IMG/VR virus record: IMGVR_UViG_3300026518_000006
Location: 1-64,000 of that record
Reading direction: 5' to 3' (one strand)
Length of the DNA stretch: 64,000 nucleotides
The position numbers and the translations under genes were made by a program. The notes below the pieces were generated by a model. It made no database searches. It was not told where the DNA came from and was given only the letters and a program-made list of their open reading frames with translations. This document shows, one piece after another, positions 7,367 to 48,433 of this stretch (position 1 is the stretch's first letter; every line of letters begins with the position of its first letter).

Positions 7367-7604
7367 TTTTCCTTTGACTGTTGATGAAAGAGAAATGTTG
7401 TTAGAAAAAGCCAAAACAAATATATTGGTAATTAAATATGTTAAAAAAGACATAGAAAAACACAAAGAAAGAGAAAAGTTAATCAAGAATTATTTAGAAG
7501 AGAGAGCTTGGGGCAAAAAACTACAAGCTCTTGAGAATAAATTAAATGATTTTGAAAAAGAACTCCAAGAGGTAATTGATAAAGCTCCTGAGCTCTTTAT
7601 TTGA
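7341..7604 (+). CDS. hypothetical coiled-coil protein with C-terminal tag (APELFI)
   Basis: 87 aa ORF. Confidence 0.7.
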   Translation: MSTLNTSYNFPLTVDEREMLLEKAKTNILVIKYVKKDIEKHKEREKLIKNYLEERAWGKKLQALENKLNDFEKELQEVIDKAPELFI

Positions 7605-8127
7605 AATCTTTATCTGCATAGTGCCACTCAGGGAAACTTATAGACGCTGAAGCCAACCACATATCTTCAGGCATTTGAATTACTTTTTGTGAGACTCTTC
7701 GTATTGCATATCTTCTTAATATAGGGGTGCCCTCAAATCTTTTAATTAAAGGCTTCACATCTTCATACATTAAATCAGGCTTCTTTTCCAACATTTCCAA
7801 TACCAACGAAGCCAATAGTACCCGCTGTTTTTCAGGCATCCAATGAATATTAAGTCCTAAAAAGTGTTTTTTATTCTGTCTTGAAAGCCCTAAAGACACA
7901 ACCAAAGGGTTTTTATCAAACTTTTTATCTTTATGAATCGCATCATATTTGAATGTTATCAGACTCCCAGGTTTAAAATTCTTAGGTGTTTTCTTTGTGG
8001 TGTACTCTTTTTTGTTTTTAATAATACTTTTTTTGATTTTCTTTAAGGTTTTCTTTGTGGCTTTAAAAAAGTCTTTTGCTTTTTTATAAGCTTTTTTAAA
8101 TATGTTTTCATTTAGGCAGTCACTCAT
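7597..8127 (-). CDS. DNA end protector, T4 gp2-like
   Basis: PGSLITFKYDA..K..FDKNPLV...FLGLNIHW motif. Confidence 0.8.
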   Translation of the reverse strand: MSDCLNENIFKKAYKKAKDFFKATKKTLKKIKKSIIKNKKEYTTKKTPKNFKPGSLITFKYDAIHKDKKFDKNPLVVSLGLSRQNKKHFLGLNIHWMPEKQRVLLASLVLEMLEKKPDLMYEDVKPLIKRFEGTPILRRYAIRRVSQKVIQMPEDMWLASASISFPEWHYADKDFK

Positions 8128-8135
8128 AAATATCC

Positions 8136-8843
8136 TTATATTTTTAAAGGTGTTTTGGGATTTGTTGGTATAAATTTACCGTCTTTAAATCTTGGGGTCA
8201 TAGACCACTTCATTATTTTTTCTTGATTTCTTAGAATTTTATAGTTTATCTCAGCTTCAAGATGTCCTAATTTTTGCTTACCTTGCTTCTCCAACAACAC
8301 ATCACCAACAGGTATTCCATTTTTTATGTTTCTATCAAATGCCATAGCTAATCTGATACTTCCATTTATATATTTACCAAGAGGAAAAATAAGACCGTAT
8401 GGCTTTGAGAGAGAAAATAACTGCTCTTTATTGATATAATTAAATATTATCACATAATCTTGAGATAAAGCATAATCAAAGACGTCATTGTTGATATAGT
8501 CTCTAATGTTGCTTTGTTTATTCGTTATTCTATATAATTTAACTTCATCATTTTGTTTGACGGGCTTAACTTTTTGAACACACCAACGCCACTCATTACC
8601 ATTTATAGTGTCGTAATTCATCATAATTGGTTTTTGTCCACCATCTAATAACAAAAAGAAGTTATATGGAGATAATACATTTATGTACTCTGTGTATTCC
8701 ACTCCATTATTTTCAAGAGCATTCAGCGATTCATTATATTGAGAAATAGAATAGTAGTTGTCAATTGTAAATAAATCTGAACGCTTTGGTATAGCTTCAT
8801 TTATTGCTGTTTTTGGTTCTAAGTCTTGTCTTGTATTTTCCAT
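8136..8843 (-). CDS. hypothetical protein (late)
   Basis: 235 aa ORF; TATAAATA at 8848-8855 on the minus strand. Confidence 0.7.
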   Translation of the reverse strand: MENTRQDLEPKTAINEAIPKRSDLFTIDNYYSISQYNESLNALENNGVEYTEYINVLSPYNFFLLLDGGQKPIMMNYDTINGNEWRWCVQKVKPVKQNDEVKLYRITNKQSNIRDYINNDVFDYALSQDYVIIFNYINKEQLFSLSKPYGLIFPLGKYINGSIRLAMAFDRNIKNGIPVGDVLLEKQGKQKLGHLEAEINYKILRNQEKIMKWSMTPRFKDGKFIPTNPKTPLKI

Positions 8844-8924
8844 ACTCTATTTATATCTAATTACTATTAACCTAATATTAAGGTTATTTAAATACAATAC
8901 AAAATTAAGATAAAAGGAATTACT

Positions 8925-9830
8925 ATGAATGAGCCTATTGCTGTTGATATCGGATATAGTTCAACAAAAGTTTCATATAGAGGAAAACAGGTAAGATTTC
9001 CTACTGCAATCAGTTTTGCTACTGATATTGGTACTCAATTTGGGCAGGAGAATGTATATAAATTTGAGGGTGAAAAATATTATGTAGGACAAGAAGCTGT
9101 ATCAGAGGAGAGCTTTACTACTACTGACTACAAATTTCTGCGTAAATTTGCACCGCTACTAATCTTTCATATTTTGAAGAAATTTGACGAGCATAATCTT
9201 GATATGCCTATTGTTGTTAAAACAGGACTTGCCATCTCGGATTGGGATAAGCGAGATGACTTTAAACAAAGATTGTCAACTATTGAAGTTGATGGTAAAA
9301 AAATTGATTTACAGGTCACTGTGATACCTCAAGGAGCAGGGGCAATTATTGATTGGGTTAACAACGAAAATAATGGGGTTTACCCTGACAGAATTTCAGT
9401 TATAGATATCGGTCACAATACTATTAATTTTTTATCATATGTAAATGGAAGACCTGTAAAAAAAGACATTAGTGGCTACCCAGGACACGGCATATCATCT
9501 ATCATAAAGCCGTTTACAAATTATCTTGAAAATACATATAAAATGAATTTCAGCCAACAAGAAGCTATCCAAATATTCATAAAAAACAAGTTTATGTTTA
9601 ATGGTGAAGACCAAGAGAATGTTAGGGAAATGATTACTCAACTTAAAAAACAGTTTGTGTCTAAGCTTTTTAATAGTGTTTTGGTGAATGATAAGAAAAT
9701 TATCGGCATTAGTGATATTGTGCTTTTGGCAGGGGGTGGGGCTCTACTGCTTCAAGATGTAGACTTTCCCCCTCAATACAAAATTATACAAGAACCAGTG
9801 TTCGCTAATGTAAGAGGGTACGCAGTATGA
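8925..9830 (+). CDS. ParM/StbA-family actin-like ATPase
   Basis: IAVDIGYSSTK, PQGAGA, VIDIGHNT and LLAGGGA actin-fold motifs. Confidence 0.85.
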   Translation: MNEPIAVDIGYSSTKVSYRGKQVRFPTAISFATDIGTQFGQENVYKFEGEKYYVGQEAVSEESFTTTDYKFLRKFAPLLIFHILKKFDEHNLDMPIVVKTGLAISDWDKRDDFKQRLSTIEVDGKKIDLQVTVIPQGAGAIIDWVNNENNGVYPDRISVIDIGHNTINFLSYVNGRPVKKDISGYPGHGISSIIKPFTNYLENTYKMNFSQQEAIQIFIKNKFMFNGEDQENVREMITQLKKQFVSKLFNSVLVNDKKIIGISDIVLLAGGGALLLQDVDFPPQYKIIQEPVFANVRGYAV

Positions 9831-10423
9831 GTTCAGATAAAAAAACAATTGGTGGTAGTTTAGCAGGCGGAAGCGGTATTTTTGAACGCATTAAGGATGA
9901 TTTTTATGCGACTGACCCATCAAGTACAAGAAGTTTATTTGAAAATGCAGATATTAATGGGAATAGTTTTTATGAGCCTTGTATTGGACAGGGTCATATT
10001 GCTGAAGTAATCAAAGAGTATTTTCCTGATGCTGAAATTATTGGGAGTGATTTGGTTGATAGAGGCTATCCGAATACTATTGTTTGTGATTATCTTACAT
10101 CAAATCCAAAACAAGTAGATTGGGTTGTAACAAATCCGCCATACAAATTGGCAAAAGAGTTTGTTGATAAAGCATTATCCCATACTAACAAAGGTGTGGC
10201 TATGTTTTTAAAGATACAGTTTTTAGAGGGTATGGGCAGAAAAGAGTGGCTTCAAAATTCTCCTCTAAAATATGTGTATGTTTTTAGTAAAAGACAAAAC
10301 CCATTAAGAGACGGTCAATCTATCAATCCTAAAACCAACAAGCCTTGGGCAAGCACTATGTGCTTTGCTTGGTTTATATGGGAGCAGGGTTATACAGGAG
10401 AGCCAACTATTCGTTGGATTTAA
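9827..10423 (+). CDS. DNA adenine methyltransferase (NPPY)
   Basis: DFYAT, EPCIGQGHI SAM motif, VVTNPPY. Confidence 0.85.
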   Translation: MSSDKKTIGGSLAGGSGIFERIKDDFYATDPSSTRSLFENADINGNSFYEPCIGQGHIAEVIKEYFPDAEIIGSDLVDRGYPNTIVCDYLTSNPKQVDWVVTNPPYKLAKEFVDKALSHTNKGVAMFLKIQFLEGMGRKEWLQNSPLKYVYVFSKRQNPLRDGQSINPKTNKPWASTMCFAWFIWEQGYTGEPTIRWI

Positions 10424-10448
10424 AAATAACAAGTATAAAGGAAAAAAT

Positions 10449-10721
10449 ATGGCAAAAGCAGTACAAGTAAATTTTGATGACAACAGTCAAAGCATCCTAA
10501 AAGAAGTTGATGCTATCCATAGAGATAGTCTTATCAATATGGGGTTGGCATTAGTATCAAGAACAGAATACTATAAAACACTGACGGGAAAAATAAACGA
10601 TGATGTTTCTAAAGTGGCTTCACTTTCATCGTTAGATGAGCTTGAAAAAGAGCTTAATGAAGAGCCTGTGAAGCCAAAAACAGCCAATGCACCAACGAGC
10701 TCAGATTGGGATGATTTTTAA
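10449..10721 (+). CDS. small protein, candidate ParR-like adaptor, acidic tail SSDWDDF
   Basis: AAAGGA RBS and ATG 10449; N-terminal beta-helix-helix-like pattern; same operon as ParM-like gene. Confidence 0.45.
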   Translation: MAKAVQVNFDDNSQSILKEVDAIHRDSLINMGLALVSRTEYYKTLTGKINDDVSKVASLSSLDELEKELNEEPVKPKTANAPTSSDWDDF

Positions 10722-10794
10722 TATTTTGAGTTTTAACTTCTTTTAAAGATTATCCTGATATAATTAGGTATCTTAAAAGAGAAAAGGATTGAAA

Positions 10795-10962
10795 ATGCAA
10801 ATCAACTTTAAAGAGATGTTGAGATTGGTTCGGCTTCGTATGCTTCAAATTGATGATGCTTCTAAAGAGTATGAGACTTTCAACAAAGAGTGGCGTAACC
10901 TTAAAGATATTGAATCTTCTTTAGTTAAAATTATCAAAGAAGAGCACAAAAGAAATTTTTAA
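10795..10962 (+). CDS. 55-aa hypothetical protein
   Basis: Hand translation MQINFKEMLRL...KRNF; cassette-type RBS AAAAGGATTGAAA. Confidence 0.65.
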   Translation: MQINFKEMLRLVRLRMLQIDDASKEYETFNKEWRNLKDIESSLVKIIKEEHKRNF

Positions 10963-10980
10963 AAATTTTTAAAAAAGTAG

Positions 10981-11009
10981 TTGACTTTTGAAGAATATTT
11001 GGTTATAAT
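10981..11009 (+). promoter_or_regulatory. sigma70 early promoter
   Basis: TTGACT-17-TATAAT. Confidence 0.8.
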
Positions 11010-11131
11010 CGGGTATCTTGAAAGGGAAATACCCACAGAACTTGATATAAAAATAAAAAAAGGATTAGTATGGGGATTATAGCGATAGATGATGTAAGTT
11101 TAATAGTTGAAAAAAATAACAAAGAGCAGAG

Positions 11132-11998
11132 ATGAAAATTTTTGTTCCTCCTATAAAATCACAGGGTATTAAAACAAAGTTAGTTCCTTGGATTAAACAG
11201 ATTGTTCCAAAAAATTTTAATGGCACTTGGGTAGAACCTTTTATGGGAACAGGAGTAGTTGCTTTTAATATCAAACCTAAAAAAGCCATTCTCTGTGATA
11301 CAAACCCTCACCTAATAAATTTTTATAACTCTTTAAAAGATGAAACAATAACTCCTAATATCGTAAGAGCCTTTTTAGAAGAAGAAGGTGTTAAACTACA
11401 ACATATTGAAGATTATTATTATCAAGTTAGAGAAAGATTTAATGAAAAGCACAATCCATTAGATTTTTTATTTATAAATCGTGCAGGTTTTAATGGTATG
11501 ATTAGGTTTAATTCAAAAGGAAAACATAATGTCCCATTTTGTAAAAAGCCCGAGAGATTTTCCAAAGCATATATTACAAAAATAGTTAATCAAGTTGAGT
11601 ATGTCTATAAGCTTATAAAACAAAACGACTATACCTTTTTATGTCAAGATTTCCAAAAGACTATAAATGAAACAAATGGTAAAGAGATAATATATTGTGA
11701 CCCACCTTATATAGATAGACACACAGACTATTTTAATAGTTGGAATGAAGAAGATGAATATAAGTTATTTAATAGTTTAAAAGACTTTCAAGGTAAATTT
11801 ATATTATCCACTTGGCACAACAATAAATACAGAAAAAATCTCTATATTGATAAGTTATGGAGTGAATTTAATCTCTTTACAAGAAAGCATTTTTATCATC
11901 TTGGAGGAAATATAAACAATAGAAATAGTATGATTGAAGCGATAATTACCAATTATACTGTTGATATATTAGAAGAGAAAGAGATAAAACAATACTAA
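11132..11998 (+). CDS. dam: Dam-family DNA adenine methyltransferase
   Basis: [23 protein letters not shown]. Confidence 0.85.
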
Positions 11999-12115
11999 AA
12001 TTCCTTTTTAATACAAATATTTGAAGGTTTGCAATCAAAATAACATATGACACAAATCTTTTCTTTAGTTATATTTTATTTTCTAAAAAAAAAGTTCTAA
12101 AAATTTTTAAAACAC

Positions 12116-12144
12116 TTGACTTTTAAAGATTATTAGGTTATAAT
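12116..12144 (+). promoter_or_regulatory. sigma70 early promoter (cassette-type)
   Basis: TTGACT-17-TATAAT with AAAGATTATT spacer. Confidence 0.8.
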
Positions 12145-12174
12145 TAGGTATCTTAAAAGAGAAAAGGATTGAAA

Positions 12175-12721: not shown

Positions 12722-12840
12722 AATTTTCTAAAATCTTTAAAAGTCCTCAAAAAGTCCTCAAAACACACAAAAAATCTCTAAAACTACTTGACTTCTATTA
12801 AAGATTATTATATAATTAGGTATAAAAAGAGATAAAGGAC
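12722..12840 (+). promoter_or_regulatory. dispersed promoter cassette (palindrome degenerate)
   Basis: CTCAAA repeats; TTGACT 12788-93, TATAAT 12811-16; AAAGGA. Confidence 0.8.
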
Positions 12841-12844
12841 TCAA

Positions 12845-13573
12845 ATGACATTTAAAGACCTCTATGGAGACAAATCAAATGAAGTCTATTATGGAGACCT
12901 TAATATCTCTGATAAAGGATTAACTTCATTAGAGGGTTGTTATAAAAAAGTTGAGGGCAATTTTGATTGTAGTTATAACAAAATAACTTCATTTAAGTAC
13001 TGTCCTGATATTAGTGGTGACTTTTATTGTAATAGAAACAACATAGCTGCATTTAAGTTTTGTCCTGATGTTGAGGGTGATTTTGATTGTAGTTATAACA
13101 AAATAACTTCCTTTAAGTACTGTCCTGATGTTAAGGGTGACTTTTATTGTAATGGAAACAACATAGCTTCATTTGAATACTGTCCTGATATTAGTGGTGA
13201 CTTTAATTGTAGTGATAATCAAATAACTTCATTTAAGTTTTGTCCTGATGTTGAGGGTGATTTTGATTGTTATAATAACAAAATAACTTCCTTTGAATAC
13301 TGTCCTGATATTAGTGGTGACTTTAATTGTAGTGATAATCAAATAACTTCATTTAAATACTGTCCTGATATTGAGGGTAATTTTTATTGTAGTAGAAACA
13401 AAATAACTTCCTTTAAGTTTTGTCCTGATATTAAGGGTAATTTTAATTGTAATCATAATCAAATAACCTCATTTGAAAACAAATACTATTACCCTAATGT
13501 AGAGTTAGACAAAGACATTAAACAAAAATATATTGAGTTCGGTAAAAAATATTTTCCTCAGTATTTTATTTGA
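12845..13573 (+). CDS. leucine-rich-repeat protein 1 (8 x 20-aa modules), tag PQYFI
   Basis: Repeat [KQN]I[TA]SF[KE][YF]CPD[IV]xG[DN]FxCxxN; 60-bp DNA repeats. Confidence 0.9.
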   Translation: MTFKDLYGDKSNEVYYGDLNISDKGLTSLEGCYKKVEGNFDCSYNKITSFKYCPDISGDFYCNRNNIAAFKFCPDVEGDFDCSYNKITSFKYCPDVKGDFYCNGNNIASFEYCPDISGDFNCSDNQITSFKFCPDVEGDFDCYNNKITSFEYCPDISGDFNCSDNQITSFKYCPDIEGNFYCSRNKITSFKFCPDIKGNFNCNHNQITSFENKYYYPNVELDKDIKQKYIEFGKKYFPQYFI

Positions 13574-13619
13574 GTACTTTAGTTGAATACTTTAGTTGAA
13601 TACTTTATTTAAGTACTTT
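13562..13619 (+). repeat. 13-bp tandem array (TACTTTAKTTRAR)
   Basis: 4-5 units overlapping the LRR stop codon. Confidence 0.85.
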
Positions 13620-20272: not shown

Positions 20273-21001
20273 ATGACATTTAAAGACCTCTATGGAGACA
20301 AATCAAATGAAGTCTATTATGGAGACCTTAATATCTCTGATAAAGGATTAACTTCATTAGAGGGTTGTTATAAAAAAGTTGAGGGCAATTTTTATTGTAG
20401 TAGAAACAAAATAACTTCATTTGAGTATTGTCCTGATATTAAGGATAACTTTTATTGTAATGGAAACAAAATAACCTCATTTAAGTTTTGTCCTGATGTT
20501 GAGGGCAATTTTTATTGTAGTAGAAACAAAATAACTTCATTTGAGTATTGTCCTGATATTAAGGGTGATTTTTATTGTAGTGGAAATCAAATAACTTCCT
20601 TTGAGTATTGTCCTGATATTAAGGGTGATTTTTATTGTAGGGGAAACAAAATAACTTCCTTTGAGTATTGTCCTGATGTTAAGGGTAGCTTTAATTGTAG
20701 AGATAATCAAATAACTTCCTTTGAGTATTGTCCTGATATTAAGGGTGATTTTTATTGTAGGGGAAACAAAATAACTTCATTTAAATACTGTCCTGATATT
20801 AAGGGTAACTTTTATTGTAGTGGAAATCAAATAACTTCCTTTGAGTATTGTCCTGATATTAGTGGTGACTTTAGTTGTCGTAATAACAAAATAACTTCCT
20901 TTGAAAACGAGTATTACTATCCTAATGTAGAGTTAGACAAAGACATTAAACAAAAATATATTGAGTTCGGTAAAGAACACTTTCCTCAGTACTTTATTTG
21001 A
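20273..21001 (+). CDS. leucine-rich-repeat protein 2 (8 x 20-aa modules), tag PQYFI
   Basis: Caps essentially identical to 12845 copy; different module order. Confidence 0.9.
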   Translation: MTFKDLYGDKSNEVYYGDLNISDKGLTSLEGCYKKVEGNFYCSRNKITSFEYCPDIKDNFYCNGNKITSFKFCPDVEGNFYCSRNKITSFEYCPDIKGDFYCSGNQITSFEYCPDIKGDFYCRGNKITSFEYCPDVKGSFNCRDNQITSFEYCPDIKGDFYCRGNKITSFKYCPDIKGNFYCSGNQITSFEYCPDISGDFSCRNNKITSFENEYYYPNVELDKDIKQKYIEFGKEHFPQYFI

Positions 21002-21060
21002 GTACTTTAGTTGAATACTTTATTTAAGTACTTTATCTGAGTACTTTATTTTAGTACTTT
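20990..21060 (+). repeat. 13-bp tandem array (TACTTTAKYTRAR)
   Basis: About 6 units overlapping the LRR stop codon. Confidence 0.85.
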
Positions 21061-29895: not shown

Positions 29896-32800
29896 ATGGC
29901 TAAAGTTTACGAACATATTTTTAAATACGGAAAGTATGGAAAAAACATCTGTATAAGAGAATACGATACTGATACTAAACAAGTAACTTTCAATACAAAC
30001 ATTGCTACAAACGAATTTATCCCAACATTATACTCTCCTAAACCAAAAAGCGGTTTTAAAAAATCTTCTATGGTTACATTTGAAGATGATTCGCCTTTAT
30101 GGGAAAAAAATTTTGAAAAAATGGGCGACCTCACAAAAATAATAAACCCTGAAAAAAGAACCGATGAAGAAAAGGAATTATTGGAGATTCAAGAAGAAGT
30201 TGGTCTTACTGAAGCACAAGAAGAGCGTCTTAATTTTTTAAGAAAAATGAGAAGTGAAGCCAACAAAAAAGTACAAGATGAATATTACGGAAACCCCGAC
30301 AGAGTTCAACAGGTAATTAGAGAGAAATATCCTGATGCAGTTAAATATGACCACGATTTTCACACTATCTTTATCGATATAGAGACTCGTTCAGGAGTAA
30401 ACTCAAATAGATTCCCTGAAGCTGAACACGCTCTTGAAGAAGTGACAGTAATTCAAATGTATTGTACTAAGAGAAAACAGTTCTACATTTTTGGTACAAA
30501 GGATTGGACTGGTACTTATAATAGTCGTTTTGGAAATATAAATTATGTCAAATTTAGAAACGAGAAAGACTTACTCAGAGGATTTGTAGAGTTTATATCA
30601 AATGATTATCCCGCTTCTCTGTTTGGATTTAACGCACAGGCTTTTGATTACCCTTATTTGGTTAATAGAATTGCAAACAACTATAAGGACATCGACTATA
30701 AAAAACTTTCTCCTGTAGGTGAGGTTACTCTTAATGTAAAGAAAAAGACATTTGATGACCGTGAATTTTTAGGGGTTGACATTAATGGTATTTTCTTATT
30801 AGACCAAAGAGACTTGGTTTTAAAATATGCCTTTTTGTCATTGGCTAACTATGGTCTTCAAGATGTAGCTTTTGCTTATGGACTAAAAGGAAAGTCATCT
30901 CAAGAAAGTTATGAATATCAAAGTTTTGACGGCAACTATACAGGAGAAGGGTGGGTAAAACTAATATCCGATATAGACCGTGTTCCTGATGACGAAAAGA
31001 TGGTATGGAAGCTACAAGACGCTAAACAAAAATGTATGCGAACAGCTCCTGAAAAATGGACACCTGAGCTACAAAAACGATTAGAACAAGCGGTTTATAA
31101 TACTTTTATGGACTATTCTATTCGTGATGTTGAGCTTATGTTAGAGATTGAAGAACAGAGTAAACTTATAGGTATCGCTAAATGGATTGCTTATACTTGT
31201 GGTGTCAATATTACCGATGTTATGGGAACATATAAGCAATGGCACTCATATACTTTTAATGACGCTATAAAGGATGGCAGAGTACTTCCATTAACTCAAA
31301 AAAATGGCGATGATGAAGCTGTATATAAAGCAGGGTTTGTAACAGCATTTCCTGGAATTTACAAGTATGTTTTATCGGTTGACTTCGCATCACTATTTCC
31401 TAATGTATTCCAAGCTGTTAATATCGGGGCTGATACAATTATACCTGAAGATAAAATGCCTAAAGATTTGTTAGAAATCAGAGAAAAGTATTTTCACTTC
31501 TTTACTAATGAAAACTTTTATGATACAGCTCAGAGAAAAACCGAAAGTGATGCCCACCACGAAGAGAGAATTAAAGGTAAAAAAGACGGGAAGCTAATAG
31601 CTAAATATGGTTCTGATGGGTGTAATGACCTACAAGAAGAGCGTGATTATTATGTTTGGTTGTTAAATCAAGATTTCAGTGAAACACTAAGAAAACATAA
31701 TGTTTCTGTTTCACCTAATGGCTACTTCTATTCTCATCATAAACAAAGCTATACTTCAAGAGCTATGGAAAACGGCATTAAAAAGAGATATGAAGCCAAA
31801 TACAAAGGTATCAAATTAGCGGGTGTTGTAGAAGATATTAAGAAGGTGCAAGCACAGAGAAAAGAAGGCAAACATCCTGAGTTATTTACAGATGTAAGTG
31901 ATGAAAAACTTCAATCTATTTTGGAGACGACTATCAAGGAAATGGAATATGAAGATAGTCTTTCGTTGGCATTGAAGATTTTTATTAACAGTAACTATGG
32001 CTCACAAGCTATGTCTATGAACGCTTTTAGTAATGGTAGATTAACGGGTGCTTCAGTAACAATTACCGCAAGATTGTTAATACAAACTGTAGCCAATGCA
32101 CTTTCTAATGAGATTAGACGATTTTTGGGTGAAGAGCCGACTTTTGATTTGGGTGAGATAGTACAAATGGACACCGATAGTGCTTATTTGTGTTTGGATA
32201 GACTTATTGAGGCGAAGCTACCTAATGCGACAGAAGCTCAAATATTACAGTTTATTCAAAATCTCTTCAAAAGTAAATTGGCACCTGTAATTCAAAACAC
32301 CATCAACGACATTGGTAAGCGTCTGAATTTTATGAAGCCTGAAGTTTTAAAAATGGACCAAGAAATTGTATCAAATAGCTTCGTATCATTAGCGTTGAAG
32401 CGTTATTTTGCGAGAGTGATTATGAGTGATGGAAATGTATTGGCTACACCAAAGATAAAAATGACAGGTATTTCATTAGTCAGTAGAAGTACTCCTGATG
32501 AAGTGAAGCTTATTCTAAAGCCCACTTTGGATTACTTTCTGAACAACGACCAAGCAGGGCTGAATAAATATTTGAATGACCATTTTCAAGACTTTAAAAA
32601 TATTGACCCAAGCAGACTTTCAAGACCTCAATCTGTAGCAAGCCTTGACTACAAACCTTATTACGATAAACGAGAAGTAAAAGATTGGAAGATTGCTAAT
32701 AAATTTGCAAGACCAATGAGAGATAAAAAGAAAAGTATCGCTGAAGGTAGAAAGGTAATGAAACTACAAACAGCACCACTGAATTCAAAAGCTTCTATTG

Positions 32801-33096
32801 TTCACAACCATTTAGTATTGGAAGCAGGATTAGAAGGGAAATATGAGCTTATCAGAAATGCTGATAAAATACGAATAGTTTACTTAAAGACACCAAACCC
32901 TGTAACAAATAATATCGATGCTATTGCTTATAAAGATAGTCAAGCGTTGAAAGATTTGGGTGTGTTACCGTATGTGGATTTCCAAACAATTTGGGATAAA
33001 GAACTTATTAAAAAAGTAGATATTATTGCTGAGAAAGTAGGTTGGAAGATTGGAGTAAGAACAGCAACTACTGAAAGAGCGGATGAGCCTTGGTAG
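29896..33096 (+). CDS. DNA polymerase family B (T4 gp43-like)
   Basis: Exo DIET / FN...FDYPY / YSIRD; Pol DFASLFP, KIFINSNYG, DTDS. Confidence 0.95.
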   Translation: MAKVYEHIFKYGKYGKNICIREYDTDTKQVTFNTNIATNEFIPTLYSPKPKSGFKKSSMVTFEDDSPLWEKNFEKMGDLTKIINPEKRTDEEKELLEIQEEVGLTEAQEERLNFLRKMRSEANKKVQDEYYGNPDRVQQVIREKYPDAVKYDHDFHTIFIDIETRSGVNSNRFPEAEHALEEVTVIQMYCTKRKQFYIFGTKDWTGTYNSRFGNINYVKFRNEKDLLRGFVEFISNDYPASLFGFNAQAFDYPYLVNRIANNYKDIDYKKLSPVGEVTLNVKKKTFDDREFLGVDINGIFLLDQRDLVLKYAFLSLANYGLQDVAFAYGLKGKSSQESYEYQSFDGNYTGEGWVKLISDIDRVPDDEKMVWKLQDAKQKCMRTAPEKWTPELQKRLEQAVYNTFMDYSIRDVELMLEIEEQSKLIGIAKWIAYTCGVNITDVMGTYKQWHSYTFNDAIKDGRVLPLTQKNGDDEAVYKAGFVTAFPGIYKYVLSVDFASLFPNVFQAVNIGADTIIPEDKMPKDLLEIREKYFHFFTNENFYDTAQRKTESDAHHEERIKGKKDGKLIAKYGSDGCNDLQEERDYYVWLLNQDFSETLRKHNVSVSPNGYFYSHHKQSYTSRAMENGIKKRYEAKYKGIKLAGVVEDIKKVQAQRKEGKHPELFTDVSDEKLQSILETTIKEMEYEDSLSLALKIFINSNYGSQAMSMNAFSNGRLTGASVTITARLLIQTVANALSNEIRRFLGEEPTFDLGEIVQMDTDSAYLCLDRLIEAKLPNATEAQILQFIQNLFKSKLAPVIQNTINDIGKRLNFMKPEVLKMDQEIVSNSFVSLALKRYFARVIMSDGNVLATPKIKMTGISLVSRSTPDEVKLILKPTLDYFLNNDQAGLNKYLNDHFQDFKNIDPSRLSRPQSVASLDYKPYYDKREVKDWKIANKFARPMRDKKKSIAEGRKVMKLQTAPLNSKASIVHNHLVLEAGLEGKYELIRNADKIRIVYLKTPNPVTNNIDAIAYKDSQALKDLGVLPYVDFQTIWDKELIKKVDIIAEKVGWKIGVRTATTERADEPW

Positions 33097-34593: not shown

Positions 34594-34905
34594 ATGGGTA
34601 TAAAATTATTTTCAAGTGGTAGAAGTGATTGTGGTGTTGTATATCCGACAGACCCAAATCCAAGTGTTTTTAAAATTGTTTCAATTCAAGAGTTCAGCGA
34701 ATACACTTTAGTAGTGGTTGACTATCCAAATTGTACTAATTTTGAGGGCAGAAAAGTTTTAGTGATGGATATGAGTGCTAATGATATTATGAGTATGGAA
34801 AAATTAGACCCTCATTTTATAGAGGGGAATAATATTATAGCGAGATTTGTGCCGACCAAAAAAGGCATAAGATTAGCTAAAAAAATATGTAAAGGTTGTA
34901 AATGA
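34594..34905 (+). CDS. conserved phage hypothetical protein
   Basis: DPNPSVFKI...YPNCTNFEGRKVLV. Confidence 0.7.
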   Translation: MGIKLFSSGRSDCGVVYPTDPNPSVFKIVSIQEFSEYTLVVVDYPNCTNFEGRKVLVMDMSANDIMSMEKLDPHFIEGNNIIARFVPTKKGIRLAKKICKGCK

Positions 34906-35918
34906 TTAAATTATTTAATGGTGATGCTCTTGATGTAATGGATAAGCTGATAGAAAAGGGTATTAAGGTGGACGCTATCATTACTGACCCACCGTATGGT
35001 ACTACAGCCTGTTCTTGGGATTCAGTAATTCCTTTTGATGAAATGTGGAAAAGATTAAATATTATTATGAAATCTAACGGGACAATCGCTTTGTTCGGTT
35101 CTGAGCCTTTTAGTAGTGCTTTGAGGATGAGTAATATAGAAATGTTTAAGTATGATTGGATATGGGAAAAATCTCAAGGTGCAAATTTTGCATTAGTAAA
35201 ACATCAACCATATAAGGTGCACGAAATTATATCTGTATTTTATAATGACCTCAGTAAAACTACATACTCAACAAAAGCGTTTAAAGAATTGAGAAGATAT
35301 TTCAAAGACCTATTAAATTATATCGGATTACCAAAGTCAAAGATAGTAAATGATGTCGGGGGAAGAGCTGACCATTGTTTTAGAAGCGATAGCTCACAGT
35401 GGTGTATTCCATCAGAAGAAACATATAATATACTGATTAACAAATACAATATAGACAAATATAAAGGATTTAAAACATATTCGGAATTAAATTTGATATA
35501 CGAAGATGAATTAAAATCATTTAAAAAAACCTACAATTATATTACTACAGATGGAAAGAAATATATATCAGGCAAAGGGCATAGTGGGGAAACAACTGGT
35601 AATTTTAAAAAAACACAAACAATAAATAACGGGAAGAGATTTCCAAGAAGTATTCAAAAATTTGCACAAAACAAAACCATTTCCTTTCACCCAACCCAAA
35701 AGCCTGTTGAATTGATGGAATATTTGATACGAACATATACAAATGAGGGAGAATTAGTTTTAGATTTCACTATGGGTTCAGGGACAACTTTAGTCGCCTG
35801 TAAACAGCTAAATAGAAATGGTATAGGTATTGAGTTAAATGAGGACTATTTTAAAATAGCACAACAAAGAGTAGACGAAGCCGTAGAGGGTTCATCTTTA
35901 AATAAGGATGTGGAATGA
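34902..35918 (+). CDS. site-specific DNA methyltransferase (N4C/N6A, beta class) with internal insertion
   Basis: ITDPPY; HPTQKP; VLDFTMGSGTT. Confidence 0.9.
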   Translation: MIKLFNGDALDVMDKLIEKGIKVDAIITDPPYGTTACSWDSVIPFDEMWKRLNIIMKSNGTIALFGSEPFSSALRMSNIEMFKYDWIWEKSQGANFALVKHQPYKVHEIISVFYNDLSKTTYSTKAFKELRRYFKDLLNYIGLPKSKIVNDVGGRADHCFRSDSSQWCIPSEETYNILINKYNIDKYKGFKTYSELNLIYEDELKSFKKTYNYITTDGKKYISGKGHSGETTGNFKKTQTINNGKRFPRSIQKFAQNKTISFHPTQKPVELMEYLIRTYTNEGELVLDFTMGSGTTLVACKQLNRNGIGIELNEDYFKIAQQRVDEAVEGSSLNKDVE

Positions 35919-37016: not shown

Positions 37017-37865
37017 ATGACATTCAAAGACCTCTATGGAGACAAATCAAATGAAGTCTATTATGGAAACCTTGATATCTCTGATAAAGGATTAACTTCA
37101 TTGGAAGGTTGTTATAAAAGAGTTGAGGGCGATTTTAATTGTAGTTATAACCAAATAACTTCATTCAAGTATTGTCCTGATATTAGTGGTGACTTTTATT
37201 GTGGTTATAATCAGATAACCTCATTTGAGTTTTGTCCTGATGTTGAGGGCAATTTTTATTGTAGTAGAAACAAAATAACTTCATTTGAGTTTTGCCCTGA
37301 TGTTAAGGGCGATTTTGATTGTAGGGGAAACAAAATAACTTCATTTAAATACTGTCCTGATGTTGAGGGTAATTTTTATTGTAGTTATAACAAAATAACT
37401 TCATTTAAGTTTTGTCCTGATATTAAGGGGAATTTTTATTGCAGTTATAATCAGATAACTTCATTCAAATGCTGTCCTGATATTAGTGGTGACTTTTATT
37501 GTGGTTATAATCAAATAACTTCATTTGAGTTTTGTCATGATATTAACGGTGTCTTTAATTGTAATGGTAATCAAATAGCTTCATTTAAATACTGTCCTGA
37601 TATTAAGGGGGATTTTTATTGTTATAATAACAAAATAGATTCCTTTAAGTATTGTCCTGATGTTAAAGGTGATATTAATTGTAGTGATAATCAAATAGCT
37701 TCATTTAAATACTGTCCTGATATTAAGGGTAATTTTAATTGTAATCATAATCAAATAACCTCATTTGAAAACAAATACTATTACCCTAATGTAGAGTTAG
37801 ACGAAGACATCAAAAAACGCTATGTTGAGTTCGGTAAAAAACACTTTCCTCAGTATTTCATATAG
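37017..37865 (+). CDS. leucine-rich-repeat protein 3 (10 x 20-aa modules), tag PQYFI
   Basis: 282 aa = 45 + 10x20 + 37. Confidence 0.9.
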   Translation: MTFKDLYGDKSNEVYYGNLDISDKGLTSLEGCYKRVEGDFNCSYNQITSFKYCPDISGDFYCGYNQITSFEFCPDVEGNFYCSRNKITSFEFCPDVKGDFDCRGNKITSFKYCPDVEGNFYCSYNKITSFKFCPDIKGNFYCSYNQITSFKCCPDISGDFYCGYNQITSFEFCHDINGVFNCNGNQIASFKYCPDIKGDFYCYNNKIDSFKYCPDVKGDINCSDNQIASFKYCPDIKGNFNCNHNQITSFENKYYYPNVELDEDIKKRYVEFGKKHFPQYFI

Positions 37866-40313: not shown

Positions 40314-41003
40314 TTGGATTATTTAAGAATGTATAATATTATTATAGAAAATAGGTTGTCAAATCCTTACCAAGGATATGTAGAAAAGCACCATATTAAA
40401 CCAAAGAGTTTAGGTGGGGATAATTCTAAATCAAATTTGGTGTCATTGACAGCAAGAGAGCATTTCATATGTCATTTTTTATTAACTAAAATATACAAAA
40501 AAGGAAGTAATGAGTGGTATAAAATGACTCGTGCTTTTATGATGATGAAAATGTCATCATTAAACCAAAATAGATATTTTAATTCACACTTATATGAAAC
40601 CAAAAGAGAAGACTTTAGTTTGGTTATGAGTACCAATCAAAAAGGTAAAGGCAACTCTCAATATGGTACTATGTGGATTTACAACTTAGAGCTTGATGAA
40701 GTTCTAAAAATTAAAAAAGAAGACTTTCCTAAATACAAAGATTTGGGTTGGCTGAGAGGTCGTAAAAACAAAAGTGAAGTCAAAAAAACTCTCATTAAAA
40801 AAGAGGATAAACAAAAAGCTTCACAAGCAAAAAAAGAAGAAAAGAAATTGTTATATAGTGAGTATTATTCTATATACAAAGAAGTTGGTTTTGAAAAATT
40901 TGTTGAGATAACAAAATATGATAAATCTAAACAAAATTTAGTACAAATGTTTTCAAAATGGGTTCAAGAATTTGTTCCTCAAAATGGAAAACGAAGATGT
41001 TAG
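40314..41003 (+). CDS. free-standing HNH homing endonuclease (Mob-like)
   Basis: EKHHIKPKSLGGDN..NLV.LTAREHFICH; NSQYGTMWI; TATAAATA at 40288-95. Confidence 0.9.
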   Translation: MDYLRMYNIIIENRLSNPYQGYVEKHHIKPKSLGGDNSKSNLVSLTAREHFICHFLLTKIYKKGSNEWYKMTRAFMMMKMSSLNQNRYFNSHLYETKREDFSLVMSTNQKGKGNSQYGTMWIYNLELDEVLKIKKEDFPKYKDLGWLRGRKNKSEVKKTLIKKEDKQKASQAKKEEKKLLYSEYYSIYKEVGFEKFVEITKYDKSKQNLVQMFSKWVQEFVPQNGKRRC

Positions 41004-41077
41004 GCTCCATCATCTAATGGTTAGGATGTTGGCTTTTCAAGCCAGTCATATGGGTTCAAATCCCGTTGGAGTCACCA
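41003..41077 (+). tRNA. tRNA-Glu (TTC)
   Basis: Cloverleaf GGCTCCA/TGGAGTC; CCA end. Confidence 0.9.
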
Positions 41078-41082
41078 TTTAT

Positions 41083-41157
41083 AGCGGGGTGTAGCAGTGG
41101 TAGCTTGCAAGGCTCATACCCTTGATGTCGGTGGTTCAAATCCACCCCCCGAAACCA
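41083..41157 (+). tRNA. tRNA-Met (CAT), initiator-like with unpaired acceptor top
   Basis: CAAGG-CTCATAC-CCTTG; mismatches at 1:72 and 2:71. Confidence 0.8.
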
Positions 41158-41250
41158 CACTGAATGAAGCGTGTAGCTATAGGAATTTGTGGGAGATAAA
41201 AGTATTATCATTACACCACATTGAACGAATACGCCTGTTCGGTATTTTTT

Positions 41251-41335
41251 GAGGAGTTGGGTGAACGGTTAAACCATCAGACTGTAAATCTGACGCTTTT
41301 TAGCATTCTTGGTTCAAATCCAAGGCTCCTCACCA
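41251..41335 (+). tRNA. tRNA-Tyr (GTA)
   Basis: Long variable arm; TCAGA-CTGTAAA-TCTGA. Confidence 0.9.
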
Positions 41336-41343
41336 TTATTTTT

Positions 41344-41420
41344 GGAGCTGTAGTTCAGTTGGTTAGAACGCTTGCCTGTCACGCAAGAGGTCGTGGGTTC
41401 GAGTCCCATCAGCTTCGCCA
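41344..41420 (+). tRNA. tRNA-Asp (GTC)
   Basis: Canonical cloverleaf; CCA end. Confidence 0.95.
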
Positions 41421-41486
41421 TAAAAGATATATTTGGGTGGTTCCTTAAAAATAAAGTGGAGTGATGGGCAACACCCATCACATTAT

Positions 41487-41564
41487 TGTGGACTAACTCA
41501 ATTTGGTTAGAGTGCTCGACTGATAATCGGGTGGTTACAGGTTCAAGTCCTGTGTCCACAACCA
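41487..41564 (+). tRNA. tRNA-Ile (GAT)
   Basis: TGTGGAC/GTCCACA; CTGATAA loop. Confidence 0.9.
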
Positions 41565-41577
41565 ATAAGGAATTATT

Positions 41578-41781
41578 ATGAATGAAAGGCATATATTGAA
41601 GCGTATGGTTAATAAAAACCAAATACCTTTAAAAGAATGTTATTCGTTATTGATTAACAATCCAATAAAGAGTAAGTTAACAAGACAGTCTGAATATTTG
41701 CACGACAATTTCTATAAAGATGAGATTTCTAATCTTTGTCACATATATTTAAAGCCTGAATTAAGCAAATATAGACTATAA
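41578..41781 (+). CDS. hypothetical protein within the tRNA cluster
   Basis: 67 aa; AAGGA RBS. Confidence 0.55.
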   Translation: MNERHILKRMVNKNQIPLKECYSLLINNPIKSKLTRQSEYLHDNFYKDEISNLCHIYLKPELSKYRL

Positions 41782-41805
41782 TAACATATATTAAAATTAT
41801 TAGTT

Positions 41806-41881
41806 GCTACATTAGCTCAATTGGTAGAGCACCTGATTTGTAATCAGGAGGTTACAAGTTCGATTCTTGTATGTAGCTCCA
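41806..41881 (+). tRNA. tRNA-Thr (TGT)
   Basis: Canonical cloverleaf; CCA end. Confidence 0.95.
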
Positions 41882-41889
41882 TATTTTAA

Positions 41890-41934
41890 TGGGCTGTAGT
41901 GTAATTGGTAACGCAAACTGGTTTTGCTACAGTT
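41890..41934 (+). pseudogene. 5' half of a tRNA, probably Gln (TTG)
   Basis: Acceptor 5' strand, D-arm and anticodon-like arm present; no T-arm or 3' strand. Confidence 0.6.
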
Positions 41935-41984
41935 ATTTCAAAATTTAATATATTTACGATATAATTAAATAAAAAAGAAATAAA

Positions 41985-42464
41985 ATGAAAGTCAATTGTG
42001 CTACCTGTAATAAAGAAATAAATAGAAAACCAAGTTATGTTAAAAAACATAAACCATATTGTTCACAAAAGTGTCGTAAACAATCAATGTTAAAAGGCAA
42101 TATGATAAAATGTGAAACTTGTGGCAAAGAAGTATGGAAAACACCAACAGATATTAAAAAAGCAAAAAATGGAAAATTATTTTGCAGTCATTCTTGTTCA
42201 GCAAAATATTCAAATAAACAAAGGGGGAGAAATAGATATAACCATAGGGAAATAGCATTTTCAAATTTCGAACACAAATGTGATATATGTGGATATAACA
42301 AAATTATAGATATATTACAAGTACATCACATAAATAGAAACAGAAGAGATAATTCTATTAAAAATTTGCAAATATTATGTCCAAATTGTCATAATGAAAT
42401 TCATTATAAAGATAATGATGGATTGTTTTGGAATAATAAAAAAAAAACAAAGATTGTCCCATAG
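41985..42464 (+). CDS. HNH endonuclease with N-terminal zinc fingers
   Basis: CxxC...CSxxC twice; CDICG..VHHINRNRRDN..NLQILCPNCH. Confidence 0.9.
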   Translation: MKVNCATCNKEINRKPSYVKKHKPYCSQKCRKQSMLKGNMIKCETCGKEVWKTPTDIKKAKNGKLFCSHSCSAKYSNKQRGRNRYNHREIAFSNFEHKCDICGYNKIIDILQVHHINRNRRDNSIKNLQILCPNCHNEIHYKDNDGLFWNNKKKTKIVP

Positions 42465-42530
42465 TATAATTGGCATTACGCCTGATTTTGGCTCAGGAGA
42501 TTTCAGGTTCGAATCCTGATGGGACATCCA
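42455..42530 (+). tRNA. tRNA-Gln (TTG), overlapping the HNH stop codon
   Basis: TGTCCCA/TGGGACA; CCTGA-TTTTGGC-TCAGG. Confidence 0.9.
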
Positions 42531-42569
42531 TTATATAAAATACCTATAAGCATTATCAGTGGTAGGCAT

Positions 42570-42601
42570 TATCGAAGGTTCGAGTCCTACTTGTGGAGCC
42601 A
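42570..42601 (+). pseudogene. 3' fragment of a tRNA
   Basis: AGGTTCGAGTCCT...TGTGGAGCCA; no 5' half. Confidence 0.55.
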
Positions 42602-42690
42602 TTTATAATATGAGGTGTGCCATCATTGGAAAGATGACTGCCCTATATTCGCTTTACCACGCTGAACGAATACGCTTATTCGGTAAATAA

Positions 42691-42776
42691 GGGCAGTTGC
42701 TCCGAATGGAAAAGGAAAGCGGCTCATAACCGCTCGCAATGTGCTTTGAGAGGTTCGATTCCTCCACTGCCCACCA
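42691..42776 (+). tRNA. tRNA with CAT anticodon and long variable arm (86 nt)
   Basis: GGGCAGT/ACTGCCC; AGCGG-CTCATAA-CCGCT; 14-nt variable region. Confidence 0.8.
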
Positions 42777-44253: not shown

Positions 44254-44436
44254 ATGAAACAACCAACAATAAACGACATTCACAGTTACACTATATTCGC
44301 CAATATTGACAAACGAAATGGTAAAATAGAAGGACACCAAATGTATCTTACTCAACTTCAAATGGAGGCTATTGAGCAGATTATTTTAAGTGATAAGATA
44401 AAAGTGGATGAAAACCCAAGTTATGAGGTTGAATAA
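44254..44436 (+). CDS. hypothetical protein
   Basis: 60 aa; AGGAG RBS. Confidence 0.6.
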   Translation: MKQPTINDIHSYTIFANIDKRNGKIEGHQMYLTQLQMEAIEQIILSDKIKVDENPSYEVE

Positions 44437-48356: not shown

Positions 48357-48433
48357 GGGTGTGTAGCTCAGTTGGTAGTAGCACTCGACTTTTAATCGAG
48401 GGGTCACAGGCTCAAACCCTGTCACACCCACCA
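48357..48433 (+). tRNA. tRNA-Lys (TTT), atypical T-loop CTCAAAC
   Basis: GGGTGTG/CACACCC; CTCGA-CTTTTAA-TCGAG. Confidence 0.9.

What the first reader, a model, noticed from the sequence alone, without database searches (positions are those of the whole stretch)
8925..10721. ParM-like actin plus candidate ParR in a T4-like phage, split by a methyltransferase
Seen: a complete ParM/StbA-type ATPase, an NPPY methyltransferase overlapping its stop, then a 90-aa protein with a beta-helix-helix-like N-terminus and an acidic tail. Established: ParM-ParR-parC segregates low-copy plasmids, and some large phages use cytoskeletal filaments (PhuZ) to position DNA. Inference: the phage may persist as an episome or carrier state, or position its replication factory. 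No clear parC iteron array is visible, only an AACCT-N7-AGGTT inverted repeat at 8867-8885.
Basis: partly seen in the sequence, partly recalled or inferred. Interest (0 to 1): 0.6.

Follow-up and report, generated by a model that had tools for sequence, protein, structure and literature searches.

The report
Phage actin-like filament and adaptor pair
A large T4-like phage carries a ParM-type actin gene and a conserved small partner gene, with a DNA methylase inserted between them. The pair most likely organises phage DNA during lytic infection rather than maintaining a plasmid.

Summary

- **Actin-like protein (8925-9830):** a complete ParM-type actin-like ATPase with ALP_N and MreB-like_C domains. 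All nucleotide-binding motifs are invariant, and its nearest structures are Ta0583, pCBH ParM and pSK41 ParM.
- **Partner (10449-10721):** belongs to an unannotated family of about 72 clusters among 1.84 billion representatives. The family has a conserved N-terminal domain, a variable linker and a C-terminal W-D-x-F tip.
- **Linkage:** at every locus with readable flanks, a family member lies zero to two genes downstream of the actin gene. This holds in unrelated phage backbones, including the lytic phages YerA41 and Carin-5.
- **Methyltransferase (9827-10423):** lineage-specific cargo in a variable slot. Relatives carry Tad2-like, crAss001_48, dUTPase or nothing there.
- **Host genome:** a distant T4-like myovirus of 235.6 kb with no integrase or resolvase found. 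In YerA41 both homologues are middle-phase transcripts.

I therefore favour a ParMR-like module acting in lytic DNA replication or positioning, not episome maintenance.

Three points are unproven. The partner's ribbon-helix-helix fold has only weak leads. Its binding to the actin protein is untested. No centromere was found: the window's inverted repeat is near chance and not conserved, although one relative has 8-bp iterons upstream.

The parts
8925..9830 (+). Actin-like ATPase of the ParM/Alp type (301 aa)
   Evidence: Pfam ALP_N 2.4e-17 and MreB-like_C 6.8e-10, both over cut-off; phrog_691 6.4e-37. Best PDB sequence match is pCBH ParM at 1.2e-8. The AF2 model has pLDDT 90. Foldseek top matches are Ta0583, pCBH ParM, pSK41 ParM, CorM and R1 ParM, all ahead of MreB. 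Invariant across 42 homologues: D8, G10, K15 (phosphate 1); Q136, G137; D161, G163, T166 (phosphate 2); G270-272 (adenosine).
9827..10423 (+). NPPY DNA methyltransferase (198 aa), cargo inserted between the actin gene and its partner
   Evidence: phrog_799 4.2e-61. Motif order: IGQG near residue 53, then NPPY at 103. ATGA overlap with the actin gene's stop. Absent from this position in all related loci, which carry other genes or none.
10449..10721 (+). Conserved 90-aa partner, the candidate adaptor. N-terminal domain = residues 1-47 (10449-10589); conserved VASLSSLDELE; variable linker; C-terminal WDDF (10707-10718).
   Evidence: No Pfam, PHROG, NCBIfam or PDB match. 22 word-search homologues. 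72 clusters in the exhaustive profile search, all 63-159 aa. Invariant D10, L17, V20, D21, H24, R25, S27-N30 and F90. 55 of 71 members end in an aromatic-x-x-aromatic tip and most of the rest end in W. Lies downstream of the actin gene in every locus. Language-model neighbours are all ribbon-helix-helix-clan families, as weak leads.
8868..8886 (.). Inverted repeat TAACCT-N7-AGGTTA in the 81-bp spacer upstream of the actin gene; possible operator, weak
   Evidence: Unique in the genome but expected by chance in an AT-rich spacer. The arms are not conserved in four relatives with the same gene arrangement. Only an AT-rich core (AAwwTTAAG) and a -10-like hexamer (TACAAT, 8893-8898) are conserved.

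Best explanation
The actin-like gene (8925-9830) and the 90-aa gene (10449-10721) form a two-gene module of the ParM-plus-adaptor kind, carried by a virulent-type T4-like jumbo phage. The proposed mechanism has three inferred steps. First, the actin-like protein binds ATP and polymerises into filaments. Second, the partner binds phage DNA as a dimer through its conserved N-terminal domain, which is probably a ribbon-helix-helix. Third, the partner's flexible acidic linker presents the C-terminal W-D-x-F tip to the actin-like protein, as the C-terminus of ParR does to ParM. Filaments would then hold, separate or move replicating phage genomes during the middle phase of lytic infection. This resembles AlpC/AlpA of prophage CGP3 and is functionally analogous to PhuZ. 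The methyltransferase is unrelated cargo, probably anti-restriction, that landed in a variable slot between the two genes and is translationally coupled to the actin gene. Shown here: the identity and intact motifs of the actin-like protein; the existence, architecture and strict synteny of the partner family; the variability of the slot; the T4-like, integrase-free backbone; and middle-phase transcription of both homologues in YerA41. Inferred: polymerisation, DNA binding, the tail-to-actin contact, and the biological role.
For: **Actin-like identity and intact catalytic motifs:**

**Partner linkage:** family members (A1 profile, E from 1e-42 to 1e-10) lie zero to two genes downstream of the actin gene in the following loci.
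- The window
- L004, L005
- L006
- L008/L009
- L012
- L013
- L014
- L021
- L023, L024
- L025
- YerA41
- Carin-5

Actin identity across them goes down to 45%, and the backbones are as different as T4-like PolB phages and T-hypermodified PolA phages.

**More distant cases:** jumbo contigs L010 and L011 have a look-alike in the same place, with a similar core and an FTSW or FDDW tip.

**Plasmid relatives:** the nearest are ParM/StbA genes of Campylobacterota plasmids (30-32% identity, E 4e-30). Each is followed by an 86-97-aa gene of the same build: a VQVTVTG strand, a SKSKAIEQAI helix, a K/E-rich linker and a terminal W.

**Architecture:** conserved N-terminal domain, variable linker and conserved aromatic tip.

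**Fold leads:** language-model neighbours of two different members are all ribbon-helix-helix-clan families, including ParG, CcdA, RHH_1, RHH_3 and CopG.

**Centromere-like site in a relative:** L008/L009 has 6.5 copies of an 8-bp iteron (TTAACCAT/TTAGCCAT) directly upstream of a TATAAT and the actin gene.

**Context:** replication and nucleotide-metabolism genes flank the module.
- gp44-like clamp loader, Hsp20 and primase.
- Topoisomerase II, exonuclease and helicases.
- Ribonucleotide reductase.

**Expression:** YerA41 Table S2 lists g140 (305 aa) and g142 (95 aa) as middle-phase and not virion-associated (PMC7354516).

**Precedent:** AlpC/AlpA (PMC4446434).
Against: The partner's fold is not established.
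- The AF2 monomer model is poor (pLDDT 63) and shows one long helix (residues 11-38) instead of strand-helix-helix.
- No Pfam, PHROG, NCBIfam or PDB match exists, even with a 71-sequence profile.
- Only 1 of 71 members touches RHH_1, at E 0.068.
- The profile comparison with the plasmid partners is not significant (E 0.003, probability 11%).

No centromere-like array lies in or near the operon in this window. The inverted repeat is near chance and its arms are not conserved.

Nothing in this family has been tested experimentally. The cyanobacterial CorMR system shows that ParMR-type pairs can be repurposed away from DNA.

The record is only 86% complete, so the absence of lysogeny genes is not proof.
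Confidence: 0.55

Rival explanations
1. Cytoskeletal repurposing without a centromere. The actin-like filaments, nucleated or regulated by the partner, act on the host cell or on virion assembly rather than on DNA. They might affect cell shape or division, anchor at the membrane, or scaffold an assembly zone. The partner's N-terminal domain would then be a protein-binding or regulatory module.
For: No centromere was found in the window. The partner's DNA-binding fold is unproven. CorMR is a documented ParMR pair that controls cell shape instead of segregating DNA (structural match to CorM).
Against: The language-model neighbours are DNA-binding ribbon-helix-helix families. One relative has iterons directly upstream of the actin gene. 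The module sits in replication modules, not morphogenesis modules.
Confidence: 0.2
2. True plasmid-type partition. The phage can persist as a low-copy episome (pseudolysogeny, carrier state or plasmid prophage), and the module segregates it at host division, as ParMRC does for plasmid R1.
For: The nearest non-phage relatives are plasmid ParM/StbA genes with a downstream small gene. PHROG names the family 'partition protein'. ParM-like genes are known in plasmid prophages of Bacillus (titles only).
Against: The backbone is T4-like with a gp23 capsid and a gp43-type polymerase. No integrase or resolvase was found. YerA41 and Carin-5 are described as lytic, and both genes are transcribed in the middle phase of a lytic cycle. 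No parC was found.
Confidence: 0.12
3. The two genes are neighbours but not partners. The 90-aa protein would be a small transcription regulator, or a replication accessory factor whose acidic aromatic tip mimics the C-terminal tip of single-strand-binding proteins. The actin-like protein would act alone or with host factors.
For: The tip (acidic residues ending in F) resembles in style the C-terminal tips of SSB-type proteins, which is my recollection and was not tested. The complex prediction gave no support (no verdict, so not evidence either way).
Against: Synteny is strict in all loci, across unrelated backbones and changing neighbours, despite frequent insertions between the two genes. 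The exhaustive search found the family only as small proteins. Every member whose context was read sits next to an actin-like gene.
Confidence: 0.1

Closest known systems
ParMRC type II plasmid partition (R1, pSK41, pCBH of Clostridium botulinum)
   Same: A ParM-type actin fold with intact nucleotide motifs. A small adaptor gene lies downstream in the same transcription direction. The adaptor has an N-terminal domain, a flexible region and a C-terminal motif. Closest solved structures are pCBH ParM, pSK41 ParM and R1 ParM.
   Different: It sits on a T4-like virulent-type phage, not a plasmid. The adaptor has no detectable sequence relation to ParR. No parC iterons occur in this window. A foreign gene lies between the two genes. 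Identity to solved ParMs is only about 16-21%.
AlpC/AlpA of Corynebacterium glutamicum prophage CGP3 (PMC4446434)
   Same: A phage-borne actin-like protein closer to ParM than to MreB, with a co-transcribed small adaptor. In CGP3 the adaptor binds DNA repeats and the filament, and both are needed for efficient phage DNA replication. This is the best functional analogue.
   Different: CGP3 is a temperate prophage of an actinobacterium. Its gene order is adaptor then actin, and its alpS repeats lie in the operon's promoter.
ParM/StbA plus small downstream gene on Campylobacterota plasmids (pCIG1485E, pHRV44, C. upsaliensis plasmid 2)
   Same: The nearest non-phage relatives of the actin-like protein (30-32% identity, E 4e-30). 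The downstream 86-97-aa proteins share the strand-helix-helix-like N-terminus, a K/E-rich linker and a terminal tryptophan.
   Different: The partner families are not significantly related by profile comparison. The plasmid genes overlap directly, with no insert.
PhuZ tubulin spindle of nucleus-forming jumbo phages
   Same: A phage-encoded cytoskeletal filament used during lytic infection to position replicating DNA.
   Different: PhuZ has a tubulin fold, no small DNA adaptor of this kind, and is associated with a phage nucleus. Here the fold is actin and the phage is T4-like.
CorMR of Anabaena (bioRxiv 10.1101/2025.06.27.661541; PDB 9rmi)
   Same: A ParMR-derived pair outside plasmids. CorM is among the top structural matches.
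   Different: It is chromosomal and controls cell shape. It serves as a warning that ParMR-like pairs need not move DNA.

Membership tests
ParM/Alp actin-like ATPases (Pfam ALP_N PF17989 + MreB-like_C PF21522) | Both domain models matched above the curated cut-off | tested here: met
   64 bits against 26.3, and 40 bits against 27.8.
ParM/Alp actin-like ATPases (Pfam ALP_N PF17989 + MreB-like_C PF21522) | Actin fold with phosphate 1, connect 1, phosphate 2 and adenosine motifs intact | tested here: met
   D8, G10, K15, Q136, G137, D161, G163, T166 and G270-272 are invariant in 42 homologues. The AF2 model has pLDDT 90 and matches ParM-type structures at E 1e-17 to 1e-13.
ParM/Alp actin-like ATPases (Pfam ALP_N PF17989 + MreB-like_C PF21522) | ATP-dependent polymerisation into filaments | not testable with these tools
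   Needs a sedimentation, light-scattering or EM assay.
ParMRC type II partition system | Adaptor gene co-directional with and adjacent to the ATPase gene | tested here: met
   The partner lies zero to two genes downstream in all loci read. In the window it is separated by one inserted methyltransferase gene.
ParMRC type II partition system | Adaptor is a ribbon-helix-helix dimer (ParR fold) | tested here: inconclusive
   The AF2 monomer is poor and shows a single helix. There is no Pfam or PDB match. Only weak language-model and Atlas leads point to ribbon-helix-helix families.
ParMRC type II partition system | Adaptor C-terminus binds the ATPase | tested here: inconclusive
   The family has a conserved aromatic tip. 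The complex prediction returned 'no answer'.
ParMRC type II partition system | Centromere (parC) of several iterons next to the operon, overlapping its promoter | tested here: not met
   The window has only one 6-bp inverted repeat, at chance level and not conserved. One relative (L008/L009) does have 6.5 copies of an 8-bp iteron upstream.
ParMRC type II partition system | Carried by a low-copy replicon that is inherited through host division | tested here: not met
   The genome is T4-like with gp23, gp2-like and gp43-type genes. No integrase or resolvase was found in an 86%-complete record. Cultured relatives are lytic.
AlpAC of prophage CGP3 | Sequence homology of the adaptor to AlpA, and of the ATPase to AlpC | not tested
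The comparison is functional only.
AlpAC of prophage CGP3 | Repeat array (alpS) in the operon's promoter, bound by the adaptor | tested here: not met
   No repeat array lies upstream of 8925.
N6-adenine/N4-cytosine DNA methyltransferases (NPPY type), for the 9827-10423 gene | SAM-binding motif I and catalytic motif IV (NPPY); match to a methyltransferase family | tested here: met
   phrog_799 4.2e-61. IGQG lies near residue 53 and NPPY at 103. The Pfam match is only marginal (EcoRI_methylase at 0.008). Target sequence and base were not determined.

The most novel reading that the evidence does not exclude
A previously unrecognised, phage-specific actin system may exist. It would pair a ParM-type filament with a new adaptor family that has a W-D-x-F tip. 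It appears to have spread as a mobile two-gene module among virulent T4-like, jumbo and T-hypermodified phages. It would organise replicating phage DNA during lytic growth, as an actin counterpart of the PhuZ spindle in phages without a nucleus. In addition, the short gap between the two genes acts as a recurrent landing site for counter-defence and nucleotide-metabolism cargo: methyltransferase, Tad2-like, crAss001_48-like, dUTPase and dNMP kinase.
Probability: 0.35. Interest if true: 0.7.

Novelty: new variant of a known kind. Interest (0 to 1): 0.5.

Why it matters
Phage-encoded cytoskeletons are known mainly from tubulin (PhuZ) in nucleus-forming jumbo phages, and from a single actin case in a temperate prophage (AlpAC). 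If this module works as proposed, actin-based positioning of DNA would also be a feature of ordinary lytic T4-like and T-hypermodified phages.

Two carriers, YerA41 and Carin-5, are in culture, so the question can be tested directly. The partner family is a new, compact candidate for a filament adaptor with a very simple recognition tip.

The variable slot between the two genes may be a useful place to look for new counter-defence genes.

Tried and rejected
- **Complex prediction.** I ran the actin-like protein against partner residues 48-90. It returned 'no answer' (score 0.01; controls not run). This is not evidence either way.
- **AF2 monomer of the partner.** The model is low confidence (pLDDT 63), so I did not use it for fold searches.
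- **Sequence and profile searches for the partner.**
  - Pfam, PHROGs, NCBIfam and PDB found nothing with the single sequence, the 23-sequence profile or the 71-sequence profile.
  - The profile comparison with the plasmid partners was not significant.
- **DNA search.** A megablast of 8000-12000 against phage records found nothing.
- **The inverted repeat as a centromere or operator.** Rejected as evidence because it is at chance level and its arms are not conserved in L012, L023, L024 and L025.
- **Shared half-site.** The TAACC core common to the window's repeat and the L008 iterons is too short to weigh.
- **Genome-wide iteron arrays.** I considered the arrays of the AAAGT[AC]CTC motif as dispersed centromeres. 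They belong to paralogous LRR-like gene cassettes and nothing links them to the module.
- **Phylogeny.** A formal tree against AlfA, Alp7A and AlpC was not built, because no reference sequences were available from a tool. I used structural and profile rankings instead.
Full report
**The genome.** The window is the first 64 kb of a single 235,593-bp IMG/VR virus record. The record is linear and 86% complete by CheckV, with about 30% G+C. It is a distant T4-like myovirus, on the following evidence:
- a gp23-family major capsid protein (PF07068, 2.7e-84) and vertex paralogues;
- a gp2-like DNA end protector at 7597-8127 on the minus strand;
- a gp43-type family B polymerase, 25-30% identical to those of Campylobacter T4-like phages;
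- a tail sheath and a baseplate protein;
- a T4-type late promoter TATAAATA in front of the minus-strand gene 8136-8843.

No integrase or resolvase was found.

**The observation.**
- 8925-9830 encodes a 301-aa protein. It passes Pfam ALP_N and MreB-like_C and matches phrog_691.
- 9827-10423 starts with an ATGA overlap on the preceding stop. It encodes a 198-aa NPPY methyltransferase (phrog_799, 4e-61).
- 10449-10721 encodes a 90-aa protein with an acidic second half ending in DWDDF. It matches nothing in any family library.
- The inverted repeat TAACCT-N7-AGGTTA lies at 8868-8886.

**The actin-like protein.**
- *Motifs:* across 42 homologues of 48-83% identity, the nucleotide-binding residues of the actin fold are invariant. 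These are D8, G10 and K15; Q136 and G137; D161, G163 and T166; and G270-272.
- *Structure:* the AF2 model is confident (pLDDT 90). Its best structural matches are the ParM-like archaeal actin Ta0583, pCBH ParM, pSK41 ParM, CorM and R1 ParM, and MreB ranks lower. By sequence, the best solved relative is pCBH ParM.
- *Plasmid relatives:* the nearest are ParM/StbA proteins of Campylobacterota plasmids (30-32% identity, E 4e-30).
- *Phage relatives:* the nearest are YerA41 gp104 and Carin-5 gp218 (45-47%). Campylobacter (CP220 group), Vibrio and Rhizobium phages have weaker relatives (21-26%), annotated variously as 'partition protein', 'MreB-like ATPase' or 'DnaK-like chaperone'.

**The partner.**
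- *Family size:* the 90-aa protein has 22 word-search homologues. An exhaustive profile search of 1.84 billion representatives found only 72 clusters, all 63-159 aa.
- *Architecture:* the family has a conserved N-terminal domain (residues 1-47). Nearly invariant positions are D10, L17, V20, D21, H24, R25, S27, L28, I29 and N30. A short conserved acidic segment follows, then a linker of variable length and composition, then a C-terminal tip.
- *The tip:* 55 of 71 members end in an aromatic-x-x-aromatic motif, mostly W-D-x-F. Most of the rest end in W.

**Synteny is the main evidence that the partner works with the actin-like protein.** A family member lies downstream of the actin gene in every locus whose flanks I could read:
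- directly adjacent in L004, L005, L008/L009, L021 and L024;
- after one gene in the window, L012, L013, L014, L023, L025, YerA41 and Carin-5;
- after two genes in L006.

The carriers include T4-like phages with a clamp loader and primase next to the module. They also include the unrelated T-hypermodified phages YerA41 and Carin-5, where it sits between topoisomerase II, an exonuclease and helicases. A further contig has ribonucleotide reductase next door. Two jumbo contigs with 49-50% identical actin genes have, in the same place, proteins with a similar core and an FTSW or FDDW tip. Those two are below significance against the profile.

**The methyltransferase is an insert.** The gene between the actin gene and its partner differs from locus to locus:

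| Locus | Gene(s) in the slot |
|---|---|
| Window | NPPY methyltransferase |
| L012 | Tad2-like (PF11195, 1e-24) |
| L014, L025, L026 | crAss001_48/'Sequestin' family (PF21825) |
| YerA41, Carin-5 | dUTPase |
| L010 | dNMP kinase |
| L006, L013, L023 | unknown genes |
| L004, L005, L008, L021, L024 | none |

L023 and L024 encode the identical actin protein but differ by a 94-aa gene in the slot, so turnover there is recent. 'Split by a methyltransferase' is therefore correct. The methyltransferase is cargo, not part of the mechanism.

**What the partner is.**
- Folding it alone gave a poor model with one long helix.
- Profile searches of Pfam and the PDB found nothing.
- For two different members, the nearest named clusters in the language-model search are all ribbon-helix-helix families: RHH_1, RHH_3, RHH_6, CcdA, ParG, NikA-like, BrnA, FitA and CopG. 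All scores are below the level at which the tool calls them more than leads.
- The small proteins that follow the nearest plasmid ParM genes have the same build. With the 71-sequence profile, hhalign aligns them in the register I expected (residues 3-48 to 2-46), but only at E 0.003 and probability 11%.
- My reading of the sequence pattern (a short strand, a helix, an H-R-x-S turn, a helix) as a ribbon-helix-helix is an inference. I rate it at about 0.65.
- The complex prediction gave no verdict.

**Centromere.** No tandem or dispersed repeat array lies within about 2 kb of the operon.
- A perfect inverted repeat of 6 bp or more occurs in 66% of shuffles of the 81-bp spacer and in 40 of 56 similar spacers of this genome.
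- Its arms are not conserved in four relatives that share the divergent gp2-like arrangement. Those relatives conserve only an AT-rich core and a -10-like hexamer about 30 nt before the start codon.
- The repeat's position, about 20-30 nt upstream of that hexamer, would suit an operator, but this is weak.
- By contrast, L008/L009 has 6.5 copies of an 8-bp unit immediately upstream of a TATAAT and the actin gene, seen in two independent samples. That is the parC-parM-parR arrangement.

**Function.**
- *Expression in a relative:* in YerA41, Supplementary Table S2 of PMC7354516 lists g140 (305 aa) and g142 (95 aa) as 'middle' and not particle-associated, alongside the neighbouring replication genes. 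These sizes and their order around the dUTPase g141 match gp104 and gp106 of the finished genome.
- *Lifestyle:* YerA41 and Carin-5 are described as lytic.
- *Precedent:* AlpC/AlpA is a ParM-like filament with a DNA-binding adaptor, and both are needed for efficient phage DNA replication.

Taken together, the best reading is a ParMR-like module that organises replicating phage DNA during lytic growth. Episome maintenance is not excluded but has nothing specific in its favour. CorMR warns that such pairs can lose the link to DNA.

**Novelty.** Actin-like genes in these phages are already annotated in databases (phrog_691 'partition protein'). None from a virulent phage appears to have been studied in the papers I could search, and the YerA41 and Carin-5 papers I searched do not mention it. 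Three things are new here:
- the partner family and its strict linkage to the actin gene;
- its tip motif;
- the variable cargo slot.

I rate this as a new variant of a known kind, of moderate interest.

Noticed in passing
window 9827-10423, and the equivalent slot in L012, L014, L025, L026, L023, L013, L006, L010, L001, L002: The gap between the actin-like gene and its partner holds different cargo in different phages: NPPY methyltransferase, Tad2-like (Thoeris anti-defence), crAss001_48/'Sequestin' family, dUTPase, dNMP kinase and unknowns. L023 and L024 have identical actin proteins but differ by one inserted gene. It looks like a hotspot for counter-defence and nucleotide-metabolism genes.
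   Followed up: partly
window 12845-13573, 20273-21001, 37017-37865; genome 100661-101329 (-) and about 111200-111640 (-): A family of paralogous genes built from a 20-aa (60-bp) repeat (CPDIxGDFxCxxNxITSF, LRR-like). A fragment of a similar gene lies in L004 (3032-3244).
   Followed up: no
window 12739-12763, 13669, 37909, 13560-13619, 20988-21060; genome 100628-100674, 111127-111157, 80310, 91759, 101418, 134920, 187617, 191272, 217636: An intergenic motif AAAGT[AC]CTC occurs as 11-bp repeats upstream of genes and as 13-bp arrays (3.6-5.6 copies) downstream of the LRR-like genes. There are 15 exact 8-mer hits against about 4 expected. These are the only iteron-type arrays in the genome. They may be a promoter class or protein-binding arrays; their function is unknown.
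   Followed up: partly
window 10740-10784, 10981-11029, 12116-12165; genome 229447-229475 and minus-strand copies near 111780 and 101358: A conserved sigma-70-like promoter (TTGACT, 17 nt, TATAAT) followed by GGTATCTTrAAAGrGAAA. It is probably the phage's early promoter with a conserved leader.
   Followed up: partly
window 8848-8855 (minus strand): A T4-type late promoter TATAAATA lies a few bases upstream of the start of the minus-strand gene 8136-8843 (phrog_12147), which precedes the gp2-like gene. It is conserved in L012, L023, L024 and L025.
   Followed up: partly
window 11132-11998, 34902-35918, 44436-45446: Further DNA methyltransferases besides the one in the finding: a Dam-family enzyme (TIGR00571, 4e-62), a phrog_67 enzyme, and a weaker third candidate. 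The phage appears to invest heavily in DNA methylation.
   Followed up: no
L024 1834-2025: In this metagenome contig the partner gene has an in-frame TAG where L023 has GAG, truncating it at residue 63. The downstream sequence still encodes the linker and the DWDDF tip. This is a recent nonsense mutation or an assembly error.
   Followed up: partly
window 41003-42776 and 48357-48433: Nine tRNA genes (Glu, Met x2, Tyr, Asp, Ile, Thr, Gln, Lys), eight of them in one cluster.
   Followed up: no
window 29896-33096: The family B DNA polymerase is long (1066 aa) and matches phrog_262 in two stretches. This may indicate an insertion, possibly an intein. An intein signal was seen in an AAA gene of relative L013.
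   Followed up: no
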